Program-made: the position numbers and the translations under genes
The notes under the pieces: generated by a model
What the model saw: the letters and a program-made list of their open reading frames with translations, nothing else
The model's database searches: none
What the model was told of the DNA's origin: nothing
Shown here: positions 14,826 to 24,030 of the stretch, piece after piece
Layout: every line of letters starts with the position of its first letter
How positions within the stretch are numbered: the stretch's first letter is position 1
Source of the DNA: Salpingoeca rosetta
Taxonomy: Eukaryota > Protista > Choanoflagellata
Direction of reading: 5' to 3'
NCBI GenBank assembly: GCA_033442325.1
Contig: JAWQFM010000019.1
Location: forward strand, 261,324 to 325,323
DNA: 64,000 nucleotides

Positions 14826-15568
14826 TGTGTGTGCATGGCACAGCTGCACGTTGGCGAATGCAAGCAACGGACCTGGGCGCCCGACTTCTTGGCCACGTCG
14901 ATGATCTTCTGCTGTTGGAGGTAGCTCTGGGACGACGGGGCGGCGCCAATCCAGTACGCTTCGTCCGCCTGCGCATGTGCAACAGAAGGTTGGAGGAGGA
15001 GGTGGTGGTGGTGGTGAGTGTGACGTTTTGTGGTAGCGTTGATACGACGCAAGCGTGAAAGGAAGCAAGCAAGGGCGTTAAAGGAAGCGAGCAGGGGCGT
15101 GAAAGAGAGCAGGTTAAGGCACGCTGTCCACTGAACACGTACACACATGCACACACACACACGTACACATACACACACATGCACACACACACACACACAC
15201 TGCGCACCATTGCGNNNNNNNNNNNNNNNNNNNNNNNNNNNNNNNNNNNNNNNNNNNNNNNNNNNNNNNNNNNNNNNNNNNNNNNNNNNNNNNNNNNNNN
15301 NNNNNNNNNNNNNNNNNNNNNNNNNNNNNNNNNNNNNNNNNNNNNNNNNNNNNNNNNNNNNNNNNNNNNNNNNNNNNNNNNNNNNNNNNNNNNNNNNNNN
15401 NNNNNNNNNNNNNNNNNNNNNNNNNNNNNNNNNNNNNNNNNNNNNNNNNNNNNNNNNNNNNNNNNNNNNNNNNNNNNNNNNNNNNNNNNNNNNNNNNNNN
15501 NNNNNNNNNNNNNNNNNNNNNNNNNNNNNNNNNNNNNNNNNNNNNNNNNNNNNNNNNNNNNNNNNNNN

Positions 15569-15611
<43 letters not shown>

Positions 15612-15700
15612 GCGGTGCGAACGTACCTTGTCTGTGCAATGCTGAGGGCACGGGCAGGCCCACGCAGCACCCACGCTCCCAATCCACCGCTCACCACCAT
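9831..15700 (-). CDS. MCCC1: 3-methylcrotonyl-CoA carboxylase alpha (biotin-containing) subunit, mitochondrial; some exons lie in gaps
   Basis: Presequence [25 protein letters not shown]; [11 protein letters not shown]; [13 protein letters not shown]; [19 protein letters not shown]; [19 protein letters not shown]; [31 protein letters not shown]; biotinyl motif VMEAMKME at ~9831-9855. Confidence 0.92.
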
Positions 15701-15888
15701 CTTGGGTTGGTTGTTGTTGCACGCACACAAGCAAGAGAGGGGAGGTGTGTTGTGTTGCACGCACGAATGAATGCGTGCAGCGTGCGGTTTGGAGGAAAAA
15801 CACACAAACACACACAAGCGAAGGAAGGAAGAGGAAAGGAAAGGAAGGACCACAGAACAAGCACACGCGCAGACAGTGAACGGACATC
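15701..15888. promoter_or_regulatory. Putative bidirectional promoter (MCCC1 / ureidoglycolate-lyase-like)
   Basis: Divergent ATGs only 188 bp apart. Confidence 0.55.
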
Positions 15889-15998
15889 ATGCTGGCGATC
15901 CTGATGACGCGAGGAGCCGTGCGGCGGGCAGTCAGGGCATCCAGTGTGCTGAGGAGAGCGACAGCGTGCGCAAGCACCTCCGGAGGCTCGGGCTACGC

Positions 15999-16097
<99 letters not shown>

Positions 16098-18102
16098 TGT
16101 GGGTGTGTGGGGGTGTGTGTGGGTGTGTGTGGGTGGGTGTGTGGGTGGGTGTGTGGGTGTGTGTGTGGGTGATGCATGCATCGTACGTTGGCGTGCCCTC
16201 TCTGTTGGCAGCGTGCGTAGTTGCATGTGTCTCTCCTTCTGCTTCATTCTCTCCAACCGTGCCGTCCCAACTCACACGTCTGTCGTGGATGTGATGTCCT
16301 GCCACTTCAGACCATTCCAAGGCCCACTTGGCCCAGGCAGAGGAGATTGTACGTGTGCCTTTGGTGATGGGCACCCCAGAGGCCCTCAAGGGCTATGCCT
16401 ACACCTTCCCCGCAACCCGTGAGGCCTTCGATCAGGTGCGACATGTGTGCGTGTATGTGTATGTATGGTGTGTATGTATGGTTGTGTGTGTGTGTATGTA
16501 TGTATGTTGTGTGTGAATGTGGTTATGTGATGTGGGTGGGGACGGTGCGCGCGCAAGAGCATGCGTGTGTGTAGTGTGTGACCCCAAGTGTACGCTTACA
16601 GCCCACACGTGTGTGCGCCATGCTCCACAGGCTGAAGTCACGATTGAGCAGTGGCCAACCCTTCCAGGCAGGCGCCCTCTGTGCCCAGACAGCGGCAAGG
16701 CCGGCGGCGTGCGAGGTGTGCATGTGTGTGTGTGTATGCATGTGTGTATGTGTGTGTGTGCGAATGCAAGTCGTTTGTACAGTGGGCCAGCTTGTGCGAG
16801 CGAGCGCGAATGTTTGTACCGTGAGCCAGTTGATGCGCGAGTGACAGAGTATGTCCGCAACCATCGCTGTGCCTGCCGTGTTCTCGCCGTGACACCCAGT
16901 ATTTGTTTCCCCCCAAATGCAGAGGGCCTGTTCACGTTCCAGTGGATTGGCGATGAGCTGCGTGCCATCAACGAGGCTGTCGACGGCAACTACGTCACGG
17001 GACGCATCTTGGAGGTGCGTTGACGATTCCATTCCAGCCTCATGCACCCCCTTCCTAATGATCACTTGCACACACTCACTCACTCACTCACACACTCACT
17101 CGCTCACACACTCACTCACACACTCACTCCTTCTCACACACACACACACACACTCACTCCTTCACTCGCACACACACACTCACTCACTCACTCACGCACT
17201 CACTCACTCACTCACTCACTCACTCACTCACTCACTCACTCACTCACTCACTCACTCGCACACACTCACTCACTCACTCACTCACTCACTCACTCACTCA
17301 CTCGCACACACTCACTCACTCACTCACTCACTCACTCACTCACTCACTCACTCACGCACACACTCACGCACACACTCACGCACACACATGCACCCCCTCT
17401 CCTCTCCCCCCAATCGTTCGCTTCGAACCTCGCACACCAGGCCGAGTATGCTCCCCAGGCGGCGCGTGTTGGTGTGGTGACGCGCGAGGCAAACTACCAC
17501 CCCGACGGCGGCCAGATTGTGTGTCCACGTGATGGCTCGCCCTTTGTCGCGTTGCTTGCTCTCCCCAACGAAGCCATCGCCCCGCAGGACTTTGTTGCCT
17601 TTTACTGCGACGGCTCCTTTGGTGCGCTGCTGCTGCTGCCGCTGCTGTGTGTATGCCTGTATGTATGTATGTATGTACGTATGTATGTACGTAAGTATGT
17701 ATGGGATAGCATGTGAGCAGCTGAAGCTAATGTGCAAACACACACACACACCAACTTCTCAGGCATCCACATCAACACCAATGTGTGGCATCAGCCCGTG
17801 TACCCCATCAGCGACACCGCCGCGTTCTATGGCAAACAGGTAGTGTGGCGTGTGCTGAACGCCTTGCTTCCTGTGCTCCTACACACACACACCCTCACTC
17901 ACTCACTCATGCACACACACACACACGCACACACTCACTCACTCACTCATACACACATGCACACACACACATGCAGGGAGCGGTGCATGCGTGCGCTGCC
18001 TACGATTCCGTGGATGAGCACGGCAAGTGGCTGTACGTGCCACTGGACCCGGCACAGGCCGTGCCACTGCCAGGCCACCTGAAGGCCGCCGAGGCATTCT
18101 AA
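15889..18102 (+). CDS. Ureidoglycolate lyase/hydrolase-like cupin protein with predicted mitochondrial presequence
   Basis: Arg/Ala-rich N-terminus MLAILMTRGAVRRAVRASSVLRR. Spliced exons give VRVPLVMGTPEALKGY, IEQWP, EANYHPDGGQ, FVAFYCDGSFGIHINTNVWHQPVYP and GKQGAVHAC; TAA at 18100-18102. Confidence 0.72.
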
Positions 18103-18328
18103 GCAACACAACTGCAGACACACATGCGCACACACATGCGCGCAGTCTGTCGATGCATGCCAAGATTGGATGCGTTATGTGCGATGAAGAAGGTCCATCT
18201 GTTAGCTCCACCACCAAACCACGTTACCACCAAGCCGCTTGCTCGCTTGCTCAGCGGCTTGTTACATACACCTGCTGCATGATAACACGCGCTGTGCTTG
18301 GTAGTTTAATTAGGCGTGGGAGAACGAA

Positions 18329-18388
<60 letters not shown>

Positions 18389-18710
18389 GAAGCGCGTTTG
18401 TAACTTATGGGGACCACACGAGAAAAAGACAAGAGTGTGGAGGAATAACAAAAAGGCAAGGGGCAAGCAACTCGAAGTGGACAAGGGGGGGGGGGGGGGG
18501 CGAACGAAATCAACAGCAACAGCAGTGCACATTTCTGTATGTGTCTGCGTGATAAACAGATGGGGTATCACAGAGCAGCGTACAGACCAGTCAGCCATGT
18601 GTTGAGCACTTGCAGCGGCGGCGGCAGCGGTGGTCGCCACGGATGCACGTCGTGGGTGCGTCGCTGGTGCATCGCGTCGGCACCATGCATGGCGTGGTTT
18701 TCGTGTGTCC

Positions 18711-18748
<38 letters not shown>

Positions 18749-19085
18749 CTTACTTGTGTGTCTGTTTGTCACCTGTCGTTGTCGTGCGCATCCTTTGCGG
18801 CCCGTTGCCGCCGGCCTCGCGCGTCCTGTGGGGTCGTGCGCTTCTTGCCTTGGTGCCGACCAAGCATCTCCCGAAACACAGGCAGCTGCGACAGCAGCAG
18901 CGTGTATGTCAACACCCACCCCACCGCAATCACACCCAGCACCAAGCCCAGGCTAAAGATGAGCCGAACAGCGGTTGTCGCTGCCACAGACAACAGCTCC
19001 CACCACCACATCTTTGTTTTTGCCTGTCGGTCTGTCAGTCAGCAGTTGCTCGTCGAAATTTCATTCACAATTATTTTCTGGCATC

Positions 19086-20174
19086 ATGGACTCGCCAAAG
19101 CTCCACACCGTGCTAATGGCAGAGTCTGTGCCACCACGCCTGCGGGAACAGGTCCACGGAGAACCCGGTGGACCCATACGCGACATCGACATCGTTGACG
19201 CGCTTCAGCGGGACGAGTGTCGGCCCACGCAGGGGGACGCATTTGTGCACCTCCACGAGGCACCGCAAGACGAGGAGCAGTGGGCAACTGTCCTGCGCAC
19301 GCTGGGGCCGTGTACGGGCGTGCTTGAGTTTGTCGACATGTTCTTCGACACAGAGGACGGGCAGCTGCGTCGGAACAACCTGTGGTACTTCGACCGCGCG
19401 GGCGAACAGGTGCTGAAGCTGAATGCGTCGAGGAACCGTTTCGACTGCCTGTTCTTCGACGCCATCCGTGACTCCGTTGCCATCAGGCGCGAACTGGGCA
19501 AGGTGCTGGGCGACCGTGTGGACGACCTGCAGCGCATCGCGGCCATCAAGACGCGGCGGCTCATGTTTGGGCCCGACACGGTGATTGACGTGGCGACACT
19601 CCCGAGCAAGAAGAAGCATGTCCTGCTGCGCACGAAGTTTCGTCTCTCCCGCGACCGCGAAGAACCCCCTCATGCGGATGAAGGCACGACTCGCCCCCAA
19701 TCCATGCGATACGTCAACTCGCGCGTTGTGGAATACCTGCTGGACGCGGGGAAGATCGGGTGTGACCCGTCGTTTGCGCCGCCGAGCAAGCACTATGCGC
19801 GCATGCCGCGTGCGATCAAGAAGCTGTGGCGCGAACAGCTGGGGCGCATCGCGAGGGTGCCGACGGATGAACCCCGACTTGAGCCGGTGACCGAGGAGTG
19901 GCGCCAATCACGCGAGCGGTACACGGCCGACATCAAGCCTCGACTGGCGGCCCTTCGAGCGAAGCATGGAGACGTGTGGGCGGTGTTTTTCCCGGACACC
20001 AGGGATCCAGTGTGCTTTGATTCAGAGCAGGAGGCAGAGGAGCACGCCAGCCAGTGTGCACACGGAGTGCCAATTATCAAGTTCCTTGGCGATGAGCCGG
20101 TTGAGGACTCGCTGCTCCTCAACAAGGTGAAGTGCCTGTTTGACCCCAGAAGGCGGCTGTTTGTGGACGTTTAA
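19086..20174 (+). CDS. Intronless ORF with degenerate CYTH/thiamine-triphosphatase-like domain and C-terminal DUF5678-like domain
   Basis: 362 codons, no microsatellites or introns. LEFVDMFFDTEDGQLRRNNLW..R....VLK and IAAIKTRR...VIDVA resemble CYTH strands. LAALRAKHGDVWAVF..VCFDSEQEAEEHA..PIIKFLGDE resembles DUF5678. Confidence 0.6.
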   Translation: MDSPKLHTVLMAESVPPRLREQVHGEPGGPIRDIDIVDALQRDECRPTQGDAFVHLHEAPQDEEQWATVLRTLGPCTGVLEFVDMFFDTEDGQLRRNNLWYFDRAGEQVLKLNASRNRFDCLFFDAIRDSVAIRRELGKVLGDRVDDLQRIAAIKTRRLMFGPDTVIDVATLPSKKKHVLLRTKFRLSRDREEPPHADEGTTRPQSMRYVNSRVVEYLLDAGKIGCDPSFAPPSKHYARMPRAIKKLWREQLGRIARVPTDEPRLEPVTEEWRQSRERYTADIKPRLAALRAKHGDVWAVFFPDTRDPVCFDSEQEAEEHASQCAHGVPIIKFLGDEPVEDSLLLNKVKCLFDPRRRLFVDV

Positions 20175-20555
20175 AATTACTTGCGTCGGCGTGGTGATCT
20201 CGGCGACTTCACCCGAATGCGGGCACGCGTCGACACTGGCTGCACGCTCCCGCTGACCCTGCCAGAGAACGCGCTGAAGCACTTCCATTTGGTCACCAAG
20301 CTCAAGCCAACGGCCATCCAGACGTTCAACGGCATGGTTGAGGCGTCAAACCACTCAGTTGATTACGAAATCAAGCTCGGTGATCCTGCCAGGCCACAGG
20401 CCACCCGTCAACTCAAGGAAATCAGGTCGGCCAACGGTTACCCCTGCGTGTTTGGGATGCCCTTGATTTCACAGTACACCCTGTCTGTGGATCACGGTGA
20501 GGGCCGATTTACGTTGGAGAGCGAATCCGAGGATGATGATGCTGATGAGGAATGA
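20175..20555 (+). CDS. Retropepsin-like (clan AA) aspartic protease domain, in frame after the TAA of the upstream ORF
   Basis: RARVDTGCTLPLTLP (DTG at 20232-20240), flap-like IQTFNG, and C-terminal CVFGMPLISQYTLSVDHGEGRFTLE. Same frame as 19086-20174; first ATG at 20217. Confidence 0.7.
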   Translation, partial: NYLRRRGDLGDFTRMRARVDTGCTLPLTLPENALKHFHLVTKLKPTAIQTFNGMVEASNHSVDYEIKLGDPARPQATRQLKEIRSANGYPCVFGMPLISQYTLSVDHGEGRFTLESESEDDDADEE

Positions 20556-21698
20556 AATGGCATGTGATGGTGCGTGTTTTGTGAGCTGGAGGTAGGGGGG
20601 AGAACGCTCCCCCAACTCACGAGAGAGCTGACACGTTCTCCATTCCCAGCTGTGACATGGTATCTTACTGCCCCTATCCCCCCACCACACACACAAACTG
20701 TCTCTGTCTCTCTGTCTCTCTCATACACTCTCTTCATGTTGTACTTGATCTCCACGCCTTGTTCTCACTCTTTGTTGGATACGCTGCAACCCCTGGGCCT
20801 GTTTGTTGAGCTGTGCTTGGCTAACAACCATTAGTAGACAGATCTGCTATTGCAACGGCGGAGAAACAAGCAAACACACGCGCGCACACACACACACACA
20901 CTCTCTCTCTCTCCTTGTGTTCGTTTTGTGAAGAGGTGAGGAACTTCGTGGTGTGTAATATTACACACGCATACACAACACACATACACAACACACGCGC
21001 ACACCCCACAGCCACACAAAACCTTGAATCTCCTCTAGGCCTCTCGGCTGGACCCCTAGGACTTTGGTCGGTTAGTTCGCAAGAACGTGGGCTGCCATGG
21101 CCCGCTGAAGAGCGTCGCCACCATCCCGGCCATATAGATTGCCGTCAAATGAGACACTACCTTAGCTGAACACATCAGAATGGTGACGTGCTGCGGCCAA
21201 ACCATCTTGATGCAGCAGCGTGTCCCCTCTCCTCCTCTCCGTGCGGCTGGCGCTCTGGGTGGGTGTTTCTTCCTTCCAAACATCTACAGGCACGGGTATA
21301 TTTGCTGCCACGTCGAGCGGGAGGAGGTGCGTCAGCATGCCCCGCGTGTATTTGAAACGATCGTTGTCGGCCACGTCCTGTCGGAAAAAAAGCAGCTTTC
21401 GAGCGAGCGATCCAGCGATCCGCTGCATGTTGTGTGCGTGTAAGGTAATCTTTCGCAATCTCCAACACCCACAGAAAGGAGAAAGGAATCAGAGGGGAAC
21501 GAACGGTGAAAGTGCAAGCTTCAATGAACAGAGGAACGGGCAGGAAGCACCAATCGATGGAAACGTCAGAACGTCTGTCTGCGTGTCAGCTCCGCGCTTC
21601 AGCGAGAAGGACCGAAAGAGACTGTTGTTGGTTTTGCTATCAGCAGCGCCAAACCTGCGGATTATTGCCAATGTGCCAGCGAATCCTCCCAACTTGCC

Positions 21699-22460
21699 AT
21701 GAAGAAGATGACAACAACAGTGGTGAAGGAGGACGCGAGCGTCGTGCTGTGCGACATTGAAGGTGTGCGAGTGCTTTGGGTGGTTTCTTGTGCTCTTGTG
21801 GCTGTGTGGTCGTGTGGCGGGAGTAGCTGGTGCGTTGGCACGTCGAGCACTGAATGTTGAGCCTTGCCAACTTGATGCTGTGTGCCCTTGCTTTTGTTAG
21901 GCACAACGACGTCCATCAAGTTTGTGAAGGACGTCCTGTTTCCCTACGTGCGCGAGAACCTAGAATCGTACCTCGAGCGAACGTGGGAGACGGCGCAAAC
22001 AAAGGGCGATGTCCAGGCCCTTCGAGACCAGGTGGGGGTACTTGAGAGGTGAACCAACTACTGAGGCACACGTGTGTGTTGTGTGTGTTGTGTGTGTTGT
22101 GTGTGTTGTGTGTGTGCATGGTGTGTGTTGTGCGTGCATTGTGTGTGTATTGTGTGTGTTGTGTGCCTCTGTGTGTTTGGTGTGATGATTTCTCCTCTGT
22201 GATCTGTATCCTGTTTTGTTCACGCCCATGTACATGCCCGTGCGTACAGTGGACGGCGGACAAGGCAGCTGGGGTGGAGGGCGCCGTTCCTATTCCAGAT
22301 GGACACACAAGGGAGGTTCGGGACGCCTGTGTAAAGTCTGTGCGGTGGCAGATGGACAATGACAGGAAAGCCACGGCATTGAAGCAGCTGCAAGGCCACA
22401 TTTGGAAGGACGCGTATGAAAGCGGCGCCGTCAAGGGCCAGTGAGTCGAGTGGACGTGTT

Positions 22461-22500
<40 letters not shown>

Positions 22501-23267
22501 TGCCTCTGTGCGGTGTGTTTAAATGCGCGTCTGTGCACAAGTGTGTGTGTGTGTGTTGTGCACATTGCTTGTTCGCTTCAAATCACCTCGTCCCATGCAC
22601 TCACTTTTGCCTGCACCCATGCTCACCCACACACATCAGCGTGTATGATGATGTGCGCCCTGCCATGGAGCGGTGGGTGGCAGATGGCATTCAGGTTCAG
22701 GTTTACTCGAGTGGCAGCGTTGCCGCTCAGAAGCTCCTCTTCAAGCACAGTGAAAACGGCGACATGACAAAGGTGCGCGCATGTGTGTGTGTGTGTGTGT
22801 GTGCGTGCGTAACTGTACCTGGTGGTTGTTTCGAGCCCTCTTCTCGCTTACGTATATGTTGCCTGGCAGTTGTTTCGAGCCCTCTTCTCGCTTACGTATA
22901 TGTTGCCTGGCAGTTGTTTCGAGCCCTCTTCTCGCTTACGTATATGTTGCCTGGTGGTTGTTTCGAGCCCTGTTGGCCCTTTGTCTTCCCGCCTTCTTCA
23001 CGTCGCAACTGCTTGTCTCCTGTGCGTTTTCTGATGGCAGCTGCTGAGCGGCCACTATGACACACGGATTGGCGGGAAAATGGAGGCCGCGAGCTATCGT
23101 CGCATCGCGGAGGAAGCAATGACGAAACCAAACTCAATCCTCTTCCTCTCGGACCGCATTGAAGGTGTGGGCAGAGCAAGGGGCAGCCAATCGCTTGAAT
23201 GCATTGCTTTGTGTTAGCCCCCCTTTCTCTGCGTGTGTGTGTGTGTCGTGTGTGTGTGTGCGCGCGC
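21699..23267 (+). CDS. ENOPH1: Enolase-phosphatase E1 (HAD family, methionine salvage); last exon expected in gap 23268-23909
   Basis: [75 protein letters not shown]. The terminal exon is visible only in the duplicate copy (29690-29919). Confidence 0.93.
22821..22971. repeat. Intronic 44-bp minisatellite, ~3.4 copies (2.4 copies at 29069-29175)
   Basis: Unit ggcagttgtttcgagccctcttctcgcttacgtatatgttgcct starts at 22821, 22865, 22909 and 22953. Confidence 0.9.
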
Positions 23268-24030
23268 NNNNNNNNNNNNNNNNNNNNNNNNNNNNNNNNN
23301 NNNNNNNNNNNNNNNNNNNNNNNNNNNNNNNNNNNNNNNNNNNNNNNNNNNNNNNNNNNNNNNNNNNNNNNNNNNNNNNNNNNNNNNNNNNNNNNNNNNN
23401 NNNNNNNNNNNNNNNNNNNNNNNNNNNNNNNNNNNNNNNNNNNNNNNNNNNNNNNNNNNNNNNNNNNNNNNNNNNNNNNNNNNNNNNNNNNNNNNNNNNN
23501 NNNNNNNNNNNNNNNNNNNNNNNNNNNNNNNNNNNNNNNNNNNNNNNNNNNNNNNNNNNNNNNNNNNNNNNNNNNNNNNNNNNNNNNNNNNNNNNNNNNN
23601 NNNNNNNNNNNNNNNNNNNNNNNNNNNNNNNNNNNNNNNNNNNNNNNNNNNNNNNNNNNNNNNNNNNNNNNNNNNNNNNNNNNNNNNNNNNNNNNNNNNN
23701 NNNNNNNNNNNNNNNNNNNNNNNNNNNNNNNNNNNNNNNNNNNNNNNNNNNNNNNNNNNNNNNNNNNNNNNNNNNNNNNNNNNNNNNNNNNNNNNNNNNN
23801 NNNNNNNNNNNNNNNNNNNNNNNNNNNNNNNNNNNNNNNNNNNNNNNNNNNNNNNNNNNNNNNNNNNNNNNNNNNNNNNNNNNNNNNNNNNNNNNNNNNN
23901 NNNNNNNNNCATACAGACGTGCGTGTTGTATGTTGTACGTGCATGTGTTGTGCATGGATGGCGAATCAATTCATTCGTGTGTTCGTACGTGCGTGTGTTC
24001 GTACGTGCGTGAGTGTGTGAGTGCGTGTTG

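What the first reader, a model, noticed from the sequence alone, without database searches (positions are those of the whole stretch)
19086..20555. Intronless CYTH-like / DUF5678-like / retropepsin polyprotein split by one in-frame TAA
Seen: a 1.47-kb intron- and microsatellite-free island among heavily spliced genes. One reading frame runs from 19086 to 20555 with a single TAA (20172-20174). The stop falls inside what looks like the protease N-terminal strands (VKCLFDPRRRLFVDV*NYLRRRG...RARVDTG), and the catalytic DTG, flap and GMPLI motifs are intact after it. Recalled: DUF5678 genes often sit next to retropepsin-like protease genes in prokaryotes, and clan AA proteases activate by dimerising. 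Inference: a horizontally acquired module fused to a degenerate CYTH nucleotide/triphosphate-binding domain, possibly a ligand-sensing protease switch (defence or cell-death type). The protease could be made by readthrough or reinitiation at ATG 20217, or disabled by a recent nonsense allele. No gag, RT, integrase or LTRs are visible. The TAA-A context is not a classic leaky stop, so a nonsense mutation or base error is equally plausible.
Basis: partly seen in the sequence, partly recalled or inferred. Interest (0 to 1): 0.8.

Follow-up and report, generated by a model that had tools for sequence, protein, structure and literature searches.

The report
Stop-split CYTH–retropepsin gene in a choanoflagellate
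An expressed, intronless choanoflagellate gene joins a CYTH-fold domain and a small DUF5678-like domain to a retrovirus-type aspartic protease domain, but a genuine stop codon cuts off the protease here, its closest relative has no stop, and four distant intact relatives carry the protease in the +1 reading frame, so this may be regulated recoding or a very recent gene break.

Summary
The frame runs from ATG 19086 to TGA 20555 and is broken only by TAA 20172-20174.

- **The stop is real.** Stranded RNA reads cover 19044-20852 without a splice joint. They show no other letter at the stop at about 56x depth, and end in a poly(A) tail. Assembly error and splicing are excluded.
Residues 53-225 have a CYTH/TTM fold (Foldseek E 6.8e-8), but HxH replaces ExExK. 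Residues 262-345 resemble DUF5678 (TM 0.65-0.68). The tail is retropepsin-like (sub-threshold Pfam hit, DTG, and a predicted dimer with DTG facing DTG).
- **The closest relative has no stop.** A metagenomic relative (68-70% identity) carries one continuous 502-codon ORF, with TTC where this genome has TAA.
- **The protease part is still constrained.** dN/dS is 0.23, against 0.19 upstream, and this lineage shows no excess of its own changes.
- **Distant relatives are also split.** Four intact lineages hold the protease ORF in the +1 frame, overlapping ORF1's end by 71-107 nt. Both Monosiga copies are degenerate.

My reading: recoding-limited protease expression, as in Gag-Pro (about 0.45), against a very recent nonsense mutation (about 0.4). 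Horizontal transfer is unsupported. There is no retroelement context.

The parts
19044..20852 (+). Transcribed region of the gene: one unspliced, polyadenylated mRNA. It has a 5' UTR of about 40 nt and a 3' UTR of about 300 nt after TGA 20555, or about 680 nt after TAA 20174.
   Evidence: Stranded coverage begins in bin 19044-19114 and runs on with no joints. Loose ends of A10 appear at 20852.
19086..20174 (+). ORF1: 362 codons plus the TAA stop. This is the default translation product.
   Evidence: Homologues are found and a full-length orthologue.
19242..19760 (+). CYTH / triphosphate-tunnel-like beta-barrel domain (residues 53-225). H55-x-H57 stands where CYTH has ExExK. Family-invariant residues are H57, D88, T89, D91, L94, R104 and R158.
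   Evidence: Model pLDDT is about 80 across this stretch. The top 43 Foldseek PDB hits are all CYTH/TTM or related folds, with mouse ThTPase 5a65_A best at E 6.8e-8. Atlas CYTH clusters reach TM 0.61.
19869..20120 (+). Helix plus a small alpha/beta module with the shape of DUF5678 (residues 262-345).
   Evidence: Atlas structure rows 1 and 3 are DUF5678 clusters, TM 0.65-0.68 over 77-79 residues. The PF18929 HMM does not match.
20106..20171 (+). First beta-strand region of the retropepsin-like domain (residues 341-362), encoded upstream of the stop.
   Evidence: It aligns with residues 1-22 of the relative's protease construct. Residues 16-18 of that construct lie in the predicted dimer interface.
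20172..20174 (+). In-frame TAA followed by A. It aligns with TTC (Phe) in the closest relative.
20175..20555 (+). ORF2: 126 codons plus TGA. It holds the remainder of the retropepsin-like domain and an acidic tail.
   Evidence: - Pfam PF13650 scores E 0.0015, 19.6 bits, below the 24.3 cut-off.
- Atlas features score 0.92 and all ten best hits with a family fall in one family or clan. Atlas structure gives TM 0.66-0.74 to Asp_protease_2 clusters.
- BLASTP against the +1-frame ORF2 of L006 gives E 4e-9.
- dN/dS against L020 is 0.23.
20217..20219 (+). First in-frame ATG after the stop, a candidate reinitiation codon. It is not conserved: the relative has CTG here.
20232..20240 (+). Catalytic-motif codons GAC ACT GGC (D-T-G).
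   Evidence: The motif is invariant in alignments A2 and A5. DTG faces DTG in the predicted dimer.
20454..20468 (+). G-M-P-L-I, the C-terminal Gly-containing retropepsin motif.
   Evidence: G, P and I are invariant in alignment A5. The corresponding segment of the relative, residues 115-130 of the construct, lies in the predicted dimer interface.

Best explanation
**Shown**
- This is a real, expressed, intronless gene. It belongs to a small family found so far only in choanoflagellates and uncultured marine eukaryotes.
- Its full coding potential is about 490 residues. In order: a disordered N-terminus, a CYTH-fold barrel with HxH in place of ExExK, a helical linker, a DUF5678-shaped module, a single-DTG retropepsin-like domain that must pair to form an active site, and an acidic tail.
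- In this genome a genuine TAA sits inside the first hairpin of the protease domain. Ordinary translation therefore yields a 362-residue protein without a protease.

**Inferred**
- The split is this organism's version of a family-wide arrangement. The protease part is kept off the main product and is appended only in a minority of translation events. Here that would need stop read-through. In the distant relatives it would need a +1 ribosomal frameshift.
- This resembles the Gag / Gag-Pro logic of retroelements. It would keep a dimerisation-activated protease scarce.
- What the protease cuts is unknown. So is whether the CYTH-like barrel senses a phosphate-bearing ligand.
For: - **Stop in the mRNA.** No splice joint, no editing at 5% or more, one poly(A) transcript.
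- **ORF2 still looks like coding sequence.** It is stop-free at p = 0.007 and has coding GC periodicity.
- **ORF2 is constrained.** dN/dS against the continuous orthologue is 0.23, against 0.19 for ORF1. With L006 as outgroup there is no excess of changes specific to this lineage: 5 versus 10 in ORF2 and 15 versus 16 in ORF1, Fisher p = 0.36. This ORF2 also scores higher against the distant L006 ORF2 than the uninterrupted orthologue does (37.7 versus 26.9 bits).
- **Distant relatives are split at about the same place.** In L004, L006-L009, L010 and L011 the DTG-bearing ORF lies in the +1 frame. It overlaps the end of ORF1 by 71-107 nt.
- **Those +1 ORFs are real coding sequence.** L006 and L010 have 134 and 138 open codons and no in-frame ATG before DTG, so separate AUG initiation cannot give an active-site-bearing product.
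- **The L006 junction is not an assembly error.** It is identical in four independent TARA assemblies.
- **The discontinuities coincide.** The window's TAA lies within two codons of L004's stop and at the start of L006's +1 window.
- **The break is inside the protease domain, not at a domain boundary.** This follows from the interface residues in the dimer model.
Against: - The closest relative has a plain sense codon and one continuous ORF, so the stop is not conserved even within this clade.
- UAA followed by A is, from general knowledge, among the strongest termination contexts.
- The 131 nt around and after the stop fold no better than shuffles (z = -0.36).
- No defined shift site could be identified in the +1 relatives.
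- It is unknown whether the contigs of those relatives are DNA or RNA.
- Both Monosiga brevicollis copies have a degenerate protease part: DMG in a different frame in one, an internal deletion in the other. The family can therefore simply lose the protease.
- No read-through product has been observed.
Confidence: 0.45

Rival explanations
1. Very recent nonsense mutation. The clade's ancestral gene was one continuous ORF, as in the closest relative. A single base change created TAA in this species or in its clonal laboratory lineage. The cell now makes only the 362-residue protein, and ORF2 is an untranslated relic that has not yet decayed.
For: - The closest relative has a sense codon (TTC) at this position.
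- The termination context is strong and there is no stimulatory RNA structure.
- Protease loss recurs in the family: both Monosiga copies are degenerate.
- A paralogue in this genome has no protease part at all.
- All available runs carry one species label. If they descend from a single isolate, which I infer and the runs do not show, a private allele could not be detected.
Against: - ORF2 has no second lesion, keeps coding periodicity, and shows no lineage-specific acceleration. By my rough estimate from zero stops or indels in 378 nt, the mutation would have to fall in about the last few percent of the branch.
- A random nonsense hit would need to land in the window of about 30 codons (roughly 6% of the gene) where the distant relatives also break the frame.
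Confidence: 0.4
2. Two separate products from one mRNA. ORF2 is translated on its own from ATG 20217 by reinitiation or internal entry, giving a 112-residue protease that pairs with itself or with ORF1's C-terminal strand.
For: - An ATG lies 45 nt after the stop.
- L004 and Monosiga 10649 also have an ATG 2-4 codons before the DTG or DMG motif.
Against: - The ATG is CTG in the closest relative.
- L006 and L010 have no in-frame ATG before DTG.
- The product would lack the N-terminal strand that lies in the predicted dimer interface.
- RNA coverage shows no internal transcript start.
- From general knowledge, reinitiation after a 362-codon ORF is inefficient in eukaryotes.
Confidence: 0.07
3. 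Domesticated or decaying retroelement fragment (gag-pro remnant).
For: A retropepsin-like domain sits behind a recoding-type discontinuity, as in Gag-Pro. The genome holds at least 14 retroelement-type Asp_protease_2 ORFs.
Against: - There are no LTRs or flanking repeats.
- There is no RT, IN or gag domain.
- ORF2 has no paralogue in the genome.
- ORF2 is far from the genome's retroelement proteases: it is not among the PF13650 hits, and hhalign gives probability 23% over the DTG stretch only.
- The upstream part is a CYTH fold, not a capsid.
Confidence: 0.03
4. Sequencing or assembly artefact at 20172.
For: None found.
Against: RNA reads from a separate 2026 run show TAA at about 56x depth with no variant. 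The 31-mers are present in runs from nine studies.
Confidence: 0.01

Closest known systems
CYTH / triphosphate tunnel metalloenzymes (thiamine triphosphatase, class IV adenylyl cyclase, TTM3; Pfam PF01928)
   Same: Residues 53-225 share the eight-stranded tunnel-like beta-barrel (Foldseek E 6.8e-8 to 1e-4, probability 1.0). The family keeps a CYTH-like (Y/F)-D-T-x-D loop and invariant arginines R104 and R158.
   Different: The ExExK metal and phosphate motif of strand 1 is replaced by h-H-h-H (H57 invariant). No member reaches the Pfam threshold; the best is P0004 at E 0.16. No CYTH protein fused to an aspartic protease was found in the literature library.
DUF5678 (Pfam PF18929), small prokaryotic and phage proteins of unknown function
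   Same: Similar predicted shape over residues 262-345 (TM 0.65-0.68).
   Different: There is no HMM match in this protein, in the family or anywhere in the genome. The function of DUF5678 is itself unknown: only one incidental mention in the library. The recalled gene-neighbourhood link to retropepsins was not testable here.
Retropepsin-like clan AA proteases (Pfam Asp_protease_2 PF13650; archaeal and bacterial single-domain forms; DDI1; retroviral PR)
   Same: A single D-T-G, a C-terminal G-x-P-x-I motif and a size of about 120-140 residues. The predicted homodimer places DTG against DTG and uses the N- and C-terminal strands.
   Different: It scores below Pfam's gathering threshold. It has no solved or named close relative. 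It is fused behind CYTH-like and DUF5678-like modules. In this genome it is interrupted by a stop inside its first hairpin.
Gag-Pro(-Pol) recoding of retroelements (MLV-type read-through, Ty1/Ty3-type +1 shift) and domesticated PEG10 (-1 shift)
   Same: A retropepsin is encoded behind an in-frame stop (here) or in a shifted frame (distant relatives). The protease would therefore be a minority extension of an abundant upstream protein.
   Different: There is no capsid, RT, IN or LTR. The upstream protein is a CYTH fold. No recognised read-through context or slippery site was found. Recoding is inferred from ORF conservation only and has not been shown.
Antizyme, ABP140, EST3 (cellular +1 frameshift genes)
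   Same: These are cellular, non-mobile genes whose full product needs a +1 shift. In L004 and L011 the candidate shift point is at the ORF1 stop codon, as in antizyme.
   Different: There is no sequence relationship. In L010 the shift must occur upstream of the ORF1 stop. No conserved shift motif is seen.

Membership tests
CYTH / TTM (PF01928) | Tunnel-shaped eight-stranded beta-barrel fold | tested here: met
   Model residues 53-225 have pLDDT about 80. The top 43 PDB hits are CYTH/TTM-type, best E 6.8e-8 with TM 0.54 normalised by the target. Atlas CYTH clusters reach TM 0.61.
CYTH / TTM (PF01928) | N-terminal ExExK motif on strand 1 | tested here: not met
   Strand 1 reads F-V-H-L-H-E-A-P. 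The family consensus is HxH with H57 invariant, and there is no Lys at the K position.
CYTH / TTM (PF01928) | Profile HMM match above the gathering score | tested here: not met
   No hit for the window protein at E up to 10. The best family member is P0004 at E 0.16, 12.3 bits against a cut-off of 23.2.
CYTH / TTM (PF01928) | Basic residues lining the tunnel that bind the triphosphate | tested here: inconclusive
   R104 and R158 are invariant and K111 is mostly K or R in alignment A1. No residue-level structural superposition was made.
DUF5678 (PF18929) | Profile HMM match | tested here: not met
   No match in the protein segments, in the family members, or in a six-frame search of the whole genome at E up to 10.
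DUF5678 (PF18929) | Fold likeness | tested here: met
   The Atlas structure search of residues 262-345 puts DUF5678 clusters at rows 1 and 3, TM 0.65-0.68. The domain is short and the model confidence low, so this is weak evidence.
The plasmid and phage tblastn searches were blank.
Retropepsin-like clan AA (PF13650 and relatives) | Asp-Thr/Ser-Gly catalytic motif after a hydrophobic strand | tested here: met
   R-V-D-T-G at 20226-20240. DTG is invariant in the five ORF2 sequences.
Retropepsin-like clan AA (PF13650 and relatives) | Profile HMM match above the gathering score | tested here: not met
   PF13650 scores E 0.0015 and 19.6 bits against a cut-off of 24.3. L011's ORF2 scores E 0.032. 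L020 has no hit.
Retropepsin-like clan AA (PF13650 and relatives) | Retropepsin fold | tested here: inconclusive
   My own model failed (pLDDT 36). The Atlas's model (pLDDT 0.57) matches Asp_protease_2 clusters at TM 0.66-0.74, and all ten best feature hits with a family share one family or clan.
Retropepsin-like clan AA (PF13650 and relatives) | Homodimer with the two DTG loops in contact | tested here: met
   Two copies of the relative's domain (L020 residues 341-480) scored 0.32 against a best control of 0.00. On the tool's microbial calibration set that mark was reached by 21 of 30 known homodimers and 0 of 23 monomers; on eukaryotes the figures were 17 of 29 and 0 of 30. Runs agree in at least 75% of contacts and pLDDT is at least 63. 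Residues 41-43 (DTG) touch their counterparts. This may reflect the model's memory of solved retropepsin dimers, and it is a prediction only.
Programmed stop-codon read-through | Leaky stop context or a downstream stimulatory structure | tested here: not met
   The context is UAA-A, with no CARYYA- or CUAG-type sequence. The fold z-score is -0.36.
Programmed stop-codon read-through | Stop conserved in relatives with a constrained downstream ORF | tested here: inconclusive
   The downstream ORF is constrained (dN/dS 0.23), but the closest relative has a sense codon. Distant relatives break the frame at about the same place.
Programmed +1 ribosomal frameshift (family members L004, L006, L010, L011) | Conserved, open, homologous ORF in the +1 frame overlapping ORF1 and lacking its own start | tested here: met
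   Searches give the frames and overlaps. BLASTP of L006's ORF2 against the window's ORF2 gives E 4e-9. The junction is identical in four assemblies.
Programmed +1 ribosomal frameshift (family members L004, L006, L010, L011) | Defined shift site and a demonstrated trans-frame protein | not testable with these tools
   Only candidates exist: GGG_G in L006, UUU_C in L010, and the ORF1 stop in L004 and L011. No shared motif was found.
LTR retroelement | LTRs, gag, RT or IN nearby | tested here: not met
   Only microsatellite repeats occur in 15500-23400. There are no such Pfam hits. The neighbouring gene is an ordinary DUF4750 gene.

The most novel reading that the evidence does not exclude
A cellular, non-mobile gene family in choanoflagellates uses translational recoding to append a dimerisation-activated retropepsin to a CYTH-fold, possibly ligand-sensing, protein. 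Most lineages would use a programmed +1 ribosomal frameshift and this organism a stop read-through. That would be a Gag-Pro-like expression strategy outside retroelements, and a previously unknown protease switch (for processing, defence or cell death).
Probability: 0.3. Interest if true: 0.85.

Novelty: new variant of a known kind. Interest (0 to 1): 0.68.

Why it matters
- **The domain combination is unreported.** A CYTH fold, a DUF5678-like module and a retropepsin in one gene do not appear in the searched literature. The combination is confined, as far as seen, to the closest unicellular relatives of animals.
- **Recoding would be notable.** If the ORF1|protease split is read by recoding, it would add a rare cellular +1 frameshift and read-through gene family. 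It would also give a natural series (continuous, stop-split, +1-split, degenerate) for studying how recoding sites evolve.
- **The organism is probably tractable.** I infer it is a genetically tractable choanoflagellate, so tagging the C-terminus would settle the question directly.
- **If it is only a fresh nonsense allele,** the finding still defines a new gene family and dates a protease loss in progress.

Tried and rejected
- **Pfam and NCBIfam.** Scans of ORF1, its segments and all family members found no CYTH or DUF5678 hit.
- **Word-based protein searches.** Both pieces returned only themselves. The profile search added only a second Monosiga copy.
- **Structure of ORF2.** Prediction from a 5-sequence alignment failed (pLDDT 36), so no fold search was run on it.
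- **Solved structures.** PDB sequence and profile searches with ORF2 gave nothing meaningful.
- **Comparison with this genome's retroelement proteases.** hhalign gave probability 23% over the DTG stretch only.
- **Locus searches.** Viral-contig scans with P0005 and P0007 gave one weak, probably spurious hit and nothing else. Plasmid and phage tblastn searches were blank.
- **Contig-based runs.** Contigs of three older runs laid no sequence on the stretch. The tool says this can be false, so only the raw RNA run is used as evidence.
- **Close variants of the L006 species.** They differ by one base in the gene, so they cannot show which frame is under selection in the overlap.
- **Small-intron explanation for the +1 loci.** Rejected. 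The homologous residues run on across the frame change without a gap. The only GT..AG candidate in L006 (46 nt, with a poor 5' site) would delete the hairpin.
- **Operon-relic explanation.** Weakened, because the break lies inside the protease domain rather than before its first strand.
- **Synteny with the relative.** None was detectable by tblastx beyond the gene itself.
Full report
**1. Observation**

The sequence and ORF list show ATG at 19086 and 362 sense codons ending at TAA 20172-20174. The same frame then stays open for 126 more codons to TGA 20553-20555. Within that stretch, ATG is at 20217, D-T-G at 20232-20240 and G-M-P-L-I at 20454-20468.

The downstream frame is stop-free in only 0.7% of shuffles. 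The other five frames of that stretch hold 3-9 stops. GC by codon position is 0.60/0.42/0.68, like ORF1's 0.69/0.42/0.76.

**2. Is the stop real, and is it in the mRNA?**

Twenty public runs from nine studies hold 95-100% of the sampled 31-mers. Raw stranded RNA reads from a 2026 run were laid on 18760-20870. They show:
- continuous coverage of the + strand RNA from about 19044 to 20852;
- depth of about 56 at the stop;
- no alternative letter at 5% or more at 20172-20174;
- no indels and no splice joints;
- non-templated A runs at 20852;
- no internal step that would suggest a second transcript start.

Base error, splicing-out and editing at 5% or more are therefore excluded. The gene is intronless and expressed. 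The stretch 18760-19043 is transcribed from the opposite strand and encodes a DUF4750 protein, so the two genes share a short divergent promoter region.

**3. What the parts are**

Pfam and NCBIfam give nothing for ORF1. An AlphaFold model built on the family alignment is confident (pLDDT about 80) for residues 53-225.
- Foldseek against the PDB returns only CYTH / triphosphate-tunnel proteins and the related Mediator and capping-enzyme barrels. Mouse and human thiamine triphosphatase come first (E 6.8e-8, probability 1.0).
- The Atlas shape search agrees.
- The CYTH signature ExExK is replaced by HxH, with H57 invariant in the family. The D-T-x-D loop and two arginines are invariant.

This is a CYTH fold with an altered, probably non-canonical, active site.

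Residues 262-345 match DUF5678 clusters in shape (TM 0.65-0.68). No HMM evidence supports this.

ORF2 is retropepsin-like on several weak lines of evidence that agree:
- PF13650 scores E 0.0015, below threshold.
- All ten best Atlas feature hits with a family share one family or clan, and Atlas structure gives TM 0.66-0.74.
- The DTG and G-x-P-x-I motifs are invariant.
- A predicted homodimer of the relative's domain puts DTG against DTG and uses the N- and C-terminal strands. It scores 0.32 against a best control of 0.00, runs agree in at least 75% of contacts, and pLDDT is at least 63. On the tool's microbial calibration set that mark was reached by 21 of 30 known homodimers and 0 of 23 monomers; on eukaryotes it was 17 of 29 and 0 of 30. 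The pass may reflect the model's memory of solved retropepsins.

Residues of that interface are encoded upstream of the window's TAA.

There is no retroelement context. No LTRs are present. ORF2 has no paralogue. The 14 retroelement-type Asp_protease_2 ORFs elsewhere in the genome are not close to it.

**4. Relatives**

Word-based searches found only the window's own proteins. The exhaustive HMMER search with ORF1 found six relatives, and the profile search found one more. Two are Monosiga brevicollis proteins (MONBRDRAFT_27892 and 10649). The rest come from marine and other metagenomes. The genome also has one paralogue of the CYTH-like part, without a protease.

I infer that the window's organism is a choanoflagellate, probably Salpingoeca rosetta. 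The genome is 55.4 Mb in 68 contigs and the gene's nearest named relatives are from Monosiga. This was not given to me and was not tested directly.

**5. The closest relative has no stop**

Two metagenome contigs (L020 = MDTD01013196.1 and L021 = MDTG01072457.1) carry an orthologue that is 68-70% identical over all 362 residues. The two are identical in the gene. There the frame runs on without interruption for 502 codons. The codon aligned with the window's TAA is TTC (Phe). The window's ATG 20217 is CTG.

Nei-Gojobori estimates between the two species:

| Part | dN | dS | dN/dS |
|---|---|---|---|
| ORF1 | 0.195 | 1.03 | 0.19 |
| ORF2 | 0.327 | 1.40 | 0.23 |

With L006 as outgroup, ORF2 changes specific to the window lineage number 5, against 10 for the relative. 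In ORF1 the counts are 15 and 16 (Fisher p = 0.36).

The window's ORF2 is also more similar to the distant L006 ORF2 than the relative's is (37.7 versus 26.9 bits). ORF2 has therefore been under protein-level constraint for essentially all of the divergence and shows no decay in this lineage. Either the stop is very young, or ORF2 is still translated.

**6. Distant relatives are split too, by a frame change**

Every distant relative whose contig reaches past ORF1 has a DTG-bearing ORF overlapping the end of ORF1 in a different frame.

| Locus | Frame of ORF2 | Overlap with ORF1 | State of ORF2 |
|---|---|---|---|
| L004 | +1 | 89 nt | contig ends after V-D-T-G-A |
| L006-L009 | +1 | 71 nt | 134 open codons |
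| L010 | +1 | 107 nt | 138 open codons |
| L011 | +1 | 71 nt | a second frame change later in ORF2 |
| Monosiga 27892 (L012) | +1 | 101 nt | remnants with an internal deletion |
| Monosiga 10649 (L013) | -1 | not measured | about 105 open codons starting at M-V-D-M-G (DTG changed to DMG) |

Further points:
- L006's ORF2 is homologous to the window's ORF2 along its whole length (E 4e-9).
- L006 and L010 have no in-frame ATG before DTG.
- The L006 junction is identical in four independent assemblies.
- Counting residues from a conserved Cys to the catalytic Asp, the homologous sequence runs on across the frame change without a gap. This leaves no room for an intron.
- The window's TAA lies within two codons of L004's stop and at the start of L006's +1 window.
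- In the ORF1 tree the +1 loci fall in at least three deep, unresolved lineages. The window and L020 form one clade (97/97), and L011 plus Monosiga form another.

An ORF that stays open and homologous in the +1 frame across this depth must be translated. With no start codon of its own, a +1 ribosomal frameshift is the simplest way. I could not define a shared shift site. The candidates are GGG_G in L006, UUU_C in L010, and the ORF1 stop in L004 and L011. I also cannot tell whether those contigs are DNA or RNA.

**7. Explanation**

Shown: the gene is real, expressed and unspliced, it has the three-part architecture, and it carries a genuine stop that makes a 362-residue protease-less protein the default product.

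Inferred: two readings remain close.

(a) The split is functional. It would be this organism's form of a family-wide device that keeps a dimerisation-activated protease as a rare C-terminal extension, by read-through here and by +1 shift elsewhere, as in Gag / Gag-Pro.
- For: the break falls where the family's breaks fall, and ORF2 is intact and constrained.
- Against: the strong UAA-A context, no downstream RNA structure (z = -0.36), and a sister lineage that manages with a continuous ORF.

(b) A very recent nonsense mutation in a clade whose gene had become continuous.
- For: the sister's sense codon, the terminator context, the recurrent loss of the protease in Monosiga, and my assumption (not shown by the runs) that the available cultures descend from one isolate.
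- Against: it must be very young, and it must have hit the roughly 6% of the gene where relatives are also split.

I put (a) at about 0.45 and (b) at about 0.40. Separate initiation at ATG 20217 gets about 0.07, a retroelement remnant about 0.03 and an artefact about 0.01.

The biochemical role is inference only. The CYTH-like barrel may bind a phosphate-bearing ligand, and the protease may be switched on by pairing.

**8. Horizontal transfer**

Nothing supports it.
- GC content (0.57-0.64) matches the surroundings.
- Codon-position GC is host-like.
- No prokaryotic, plasmid or phage relative was found.
- All relatives are eukaryotic or of unknown origin.
- The recalled DUF5678-retropepsin adjacency in prokaryotes could not be tested with the handles available.

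**9. Novelty**

The literature library holds no paper with both CYTH and retropepsin. It has one incidental mention of DUF5678, and nothing on recoding of such a gene in choanoflagellates. The architecture is new. The split, if read by recoding, would be a new cellular instance of a known kind of mechanism.

Noticed in passing
L004 1149-1346; L006 1972-2376; L010 1160-1576; L011 5563-6072: In four distant relatives the retropepsin-like ORF lies in the +1 frame and overlaps the end of the CYTH/DUF5678 ORF by 71-107 nt. L006 and L010 have no in-frame ATG before DTG. This is a candidate family-wide programmed +1 frameshift. The shift site is undefined.
   Followed up: partly
L020 1841-3349 and L021 1466-2974: Metagenome contigs MDTD01013196.1 and MDTG01072457.1 carry the closest orthologue as one continuous 502-codon ORF with a long Asp/Asn-rich acidic tail. 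The flanks show no detectable synteny with the window.
   Followed up: yes
L012 5001-6130 (Monosiga brevicollis CH991563.1, MONBRDRAFT_27892): The public gene model spans 1130 nt for 367 residues, which implies a 26-nt 'intron'. That 'intron' bridges a frame change inside ORF1. Together with the deleted protease remnant downstream, this copy looks like a pseudogene.
   Followed up: partly
L013 3001-4480 (Monosiga brevicollis CH991563.1, MONBRDRAFT_10649): The second Monosiga copy is on the same scaffold. Its protease-like ORF of about 105 open codons is in the -1 frame. It starts right at M-V-D-M-G, with DMG in place of DTG, so it is probably catalytically dead.
   Followed up: partly
L002 1381-2568 (G000 contig C27, 369976-370485 region): This is an intronless 395-codon paralogue of the CYTH-like part (28% identity, E 1e-12). 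It has an unrelated C-terminus and no protease ORF. Whether it is expressed was not checked.
   Followed up: partly
window 18769-19011 (- strand): The divergent upstream neighbour encodes an 80-residue membrane protein matching DUF4750 (E 1.5e-8). It is transcribed from the - strand in the RNA run. Its start lies only about 75 nt from ATG 19086, which implies a very short bidirectional promoter.
   Followed up: partly
window 20599 and 20602: Minority G>C differences appear in RNA reads in the 3' UTR (3 of 49 and 6 of 56 reads). They could be sequencing noise or a polymorphism.
   Followed up: no
window about 15000-15570 and 23200-24000: GC fraction drops sharply (0.23 and 0.08), and N runs were seen at 15561. 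These are assembly gaps flanked by long (CA)n, (GT)n and (CACT)n microsatellites.
   Followed up: no
G000 contigs C3, C6, C7, C17, C18, C32 and others (L014-L019): Fourteen Asp_protease_2 matches lie inside long open frames of up to 3744 residues, presumably retroelement polyproteins. They are unrelated to the locus studied here.
   Followed up: no
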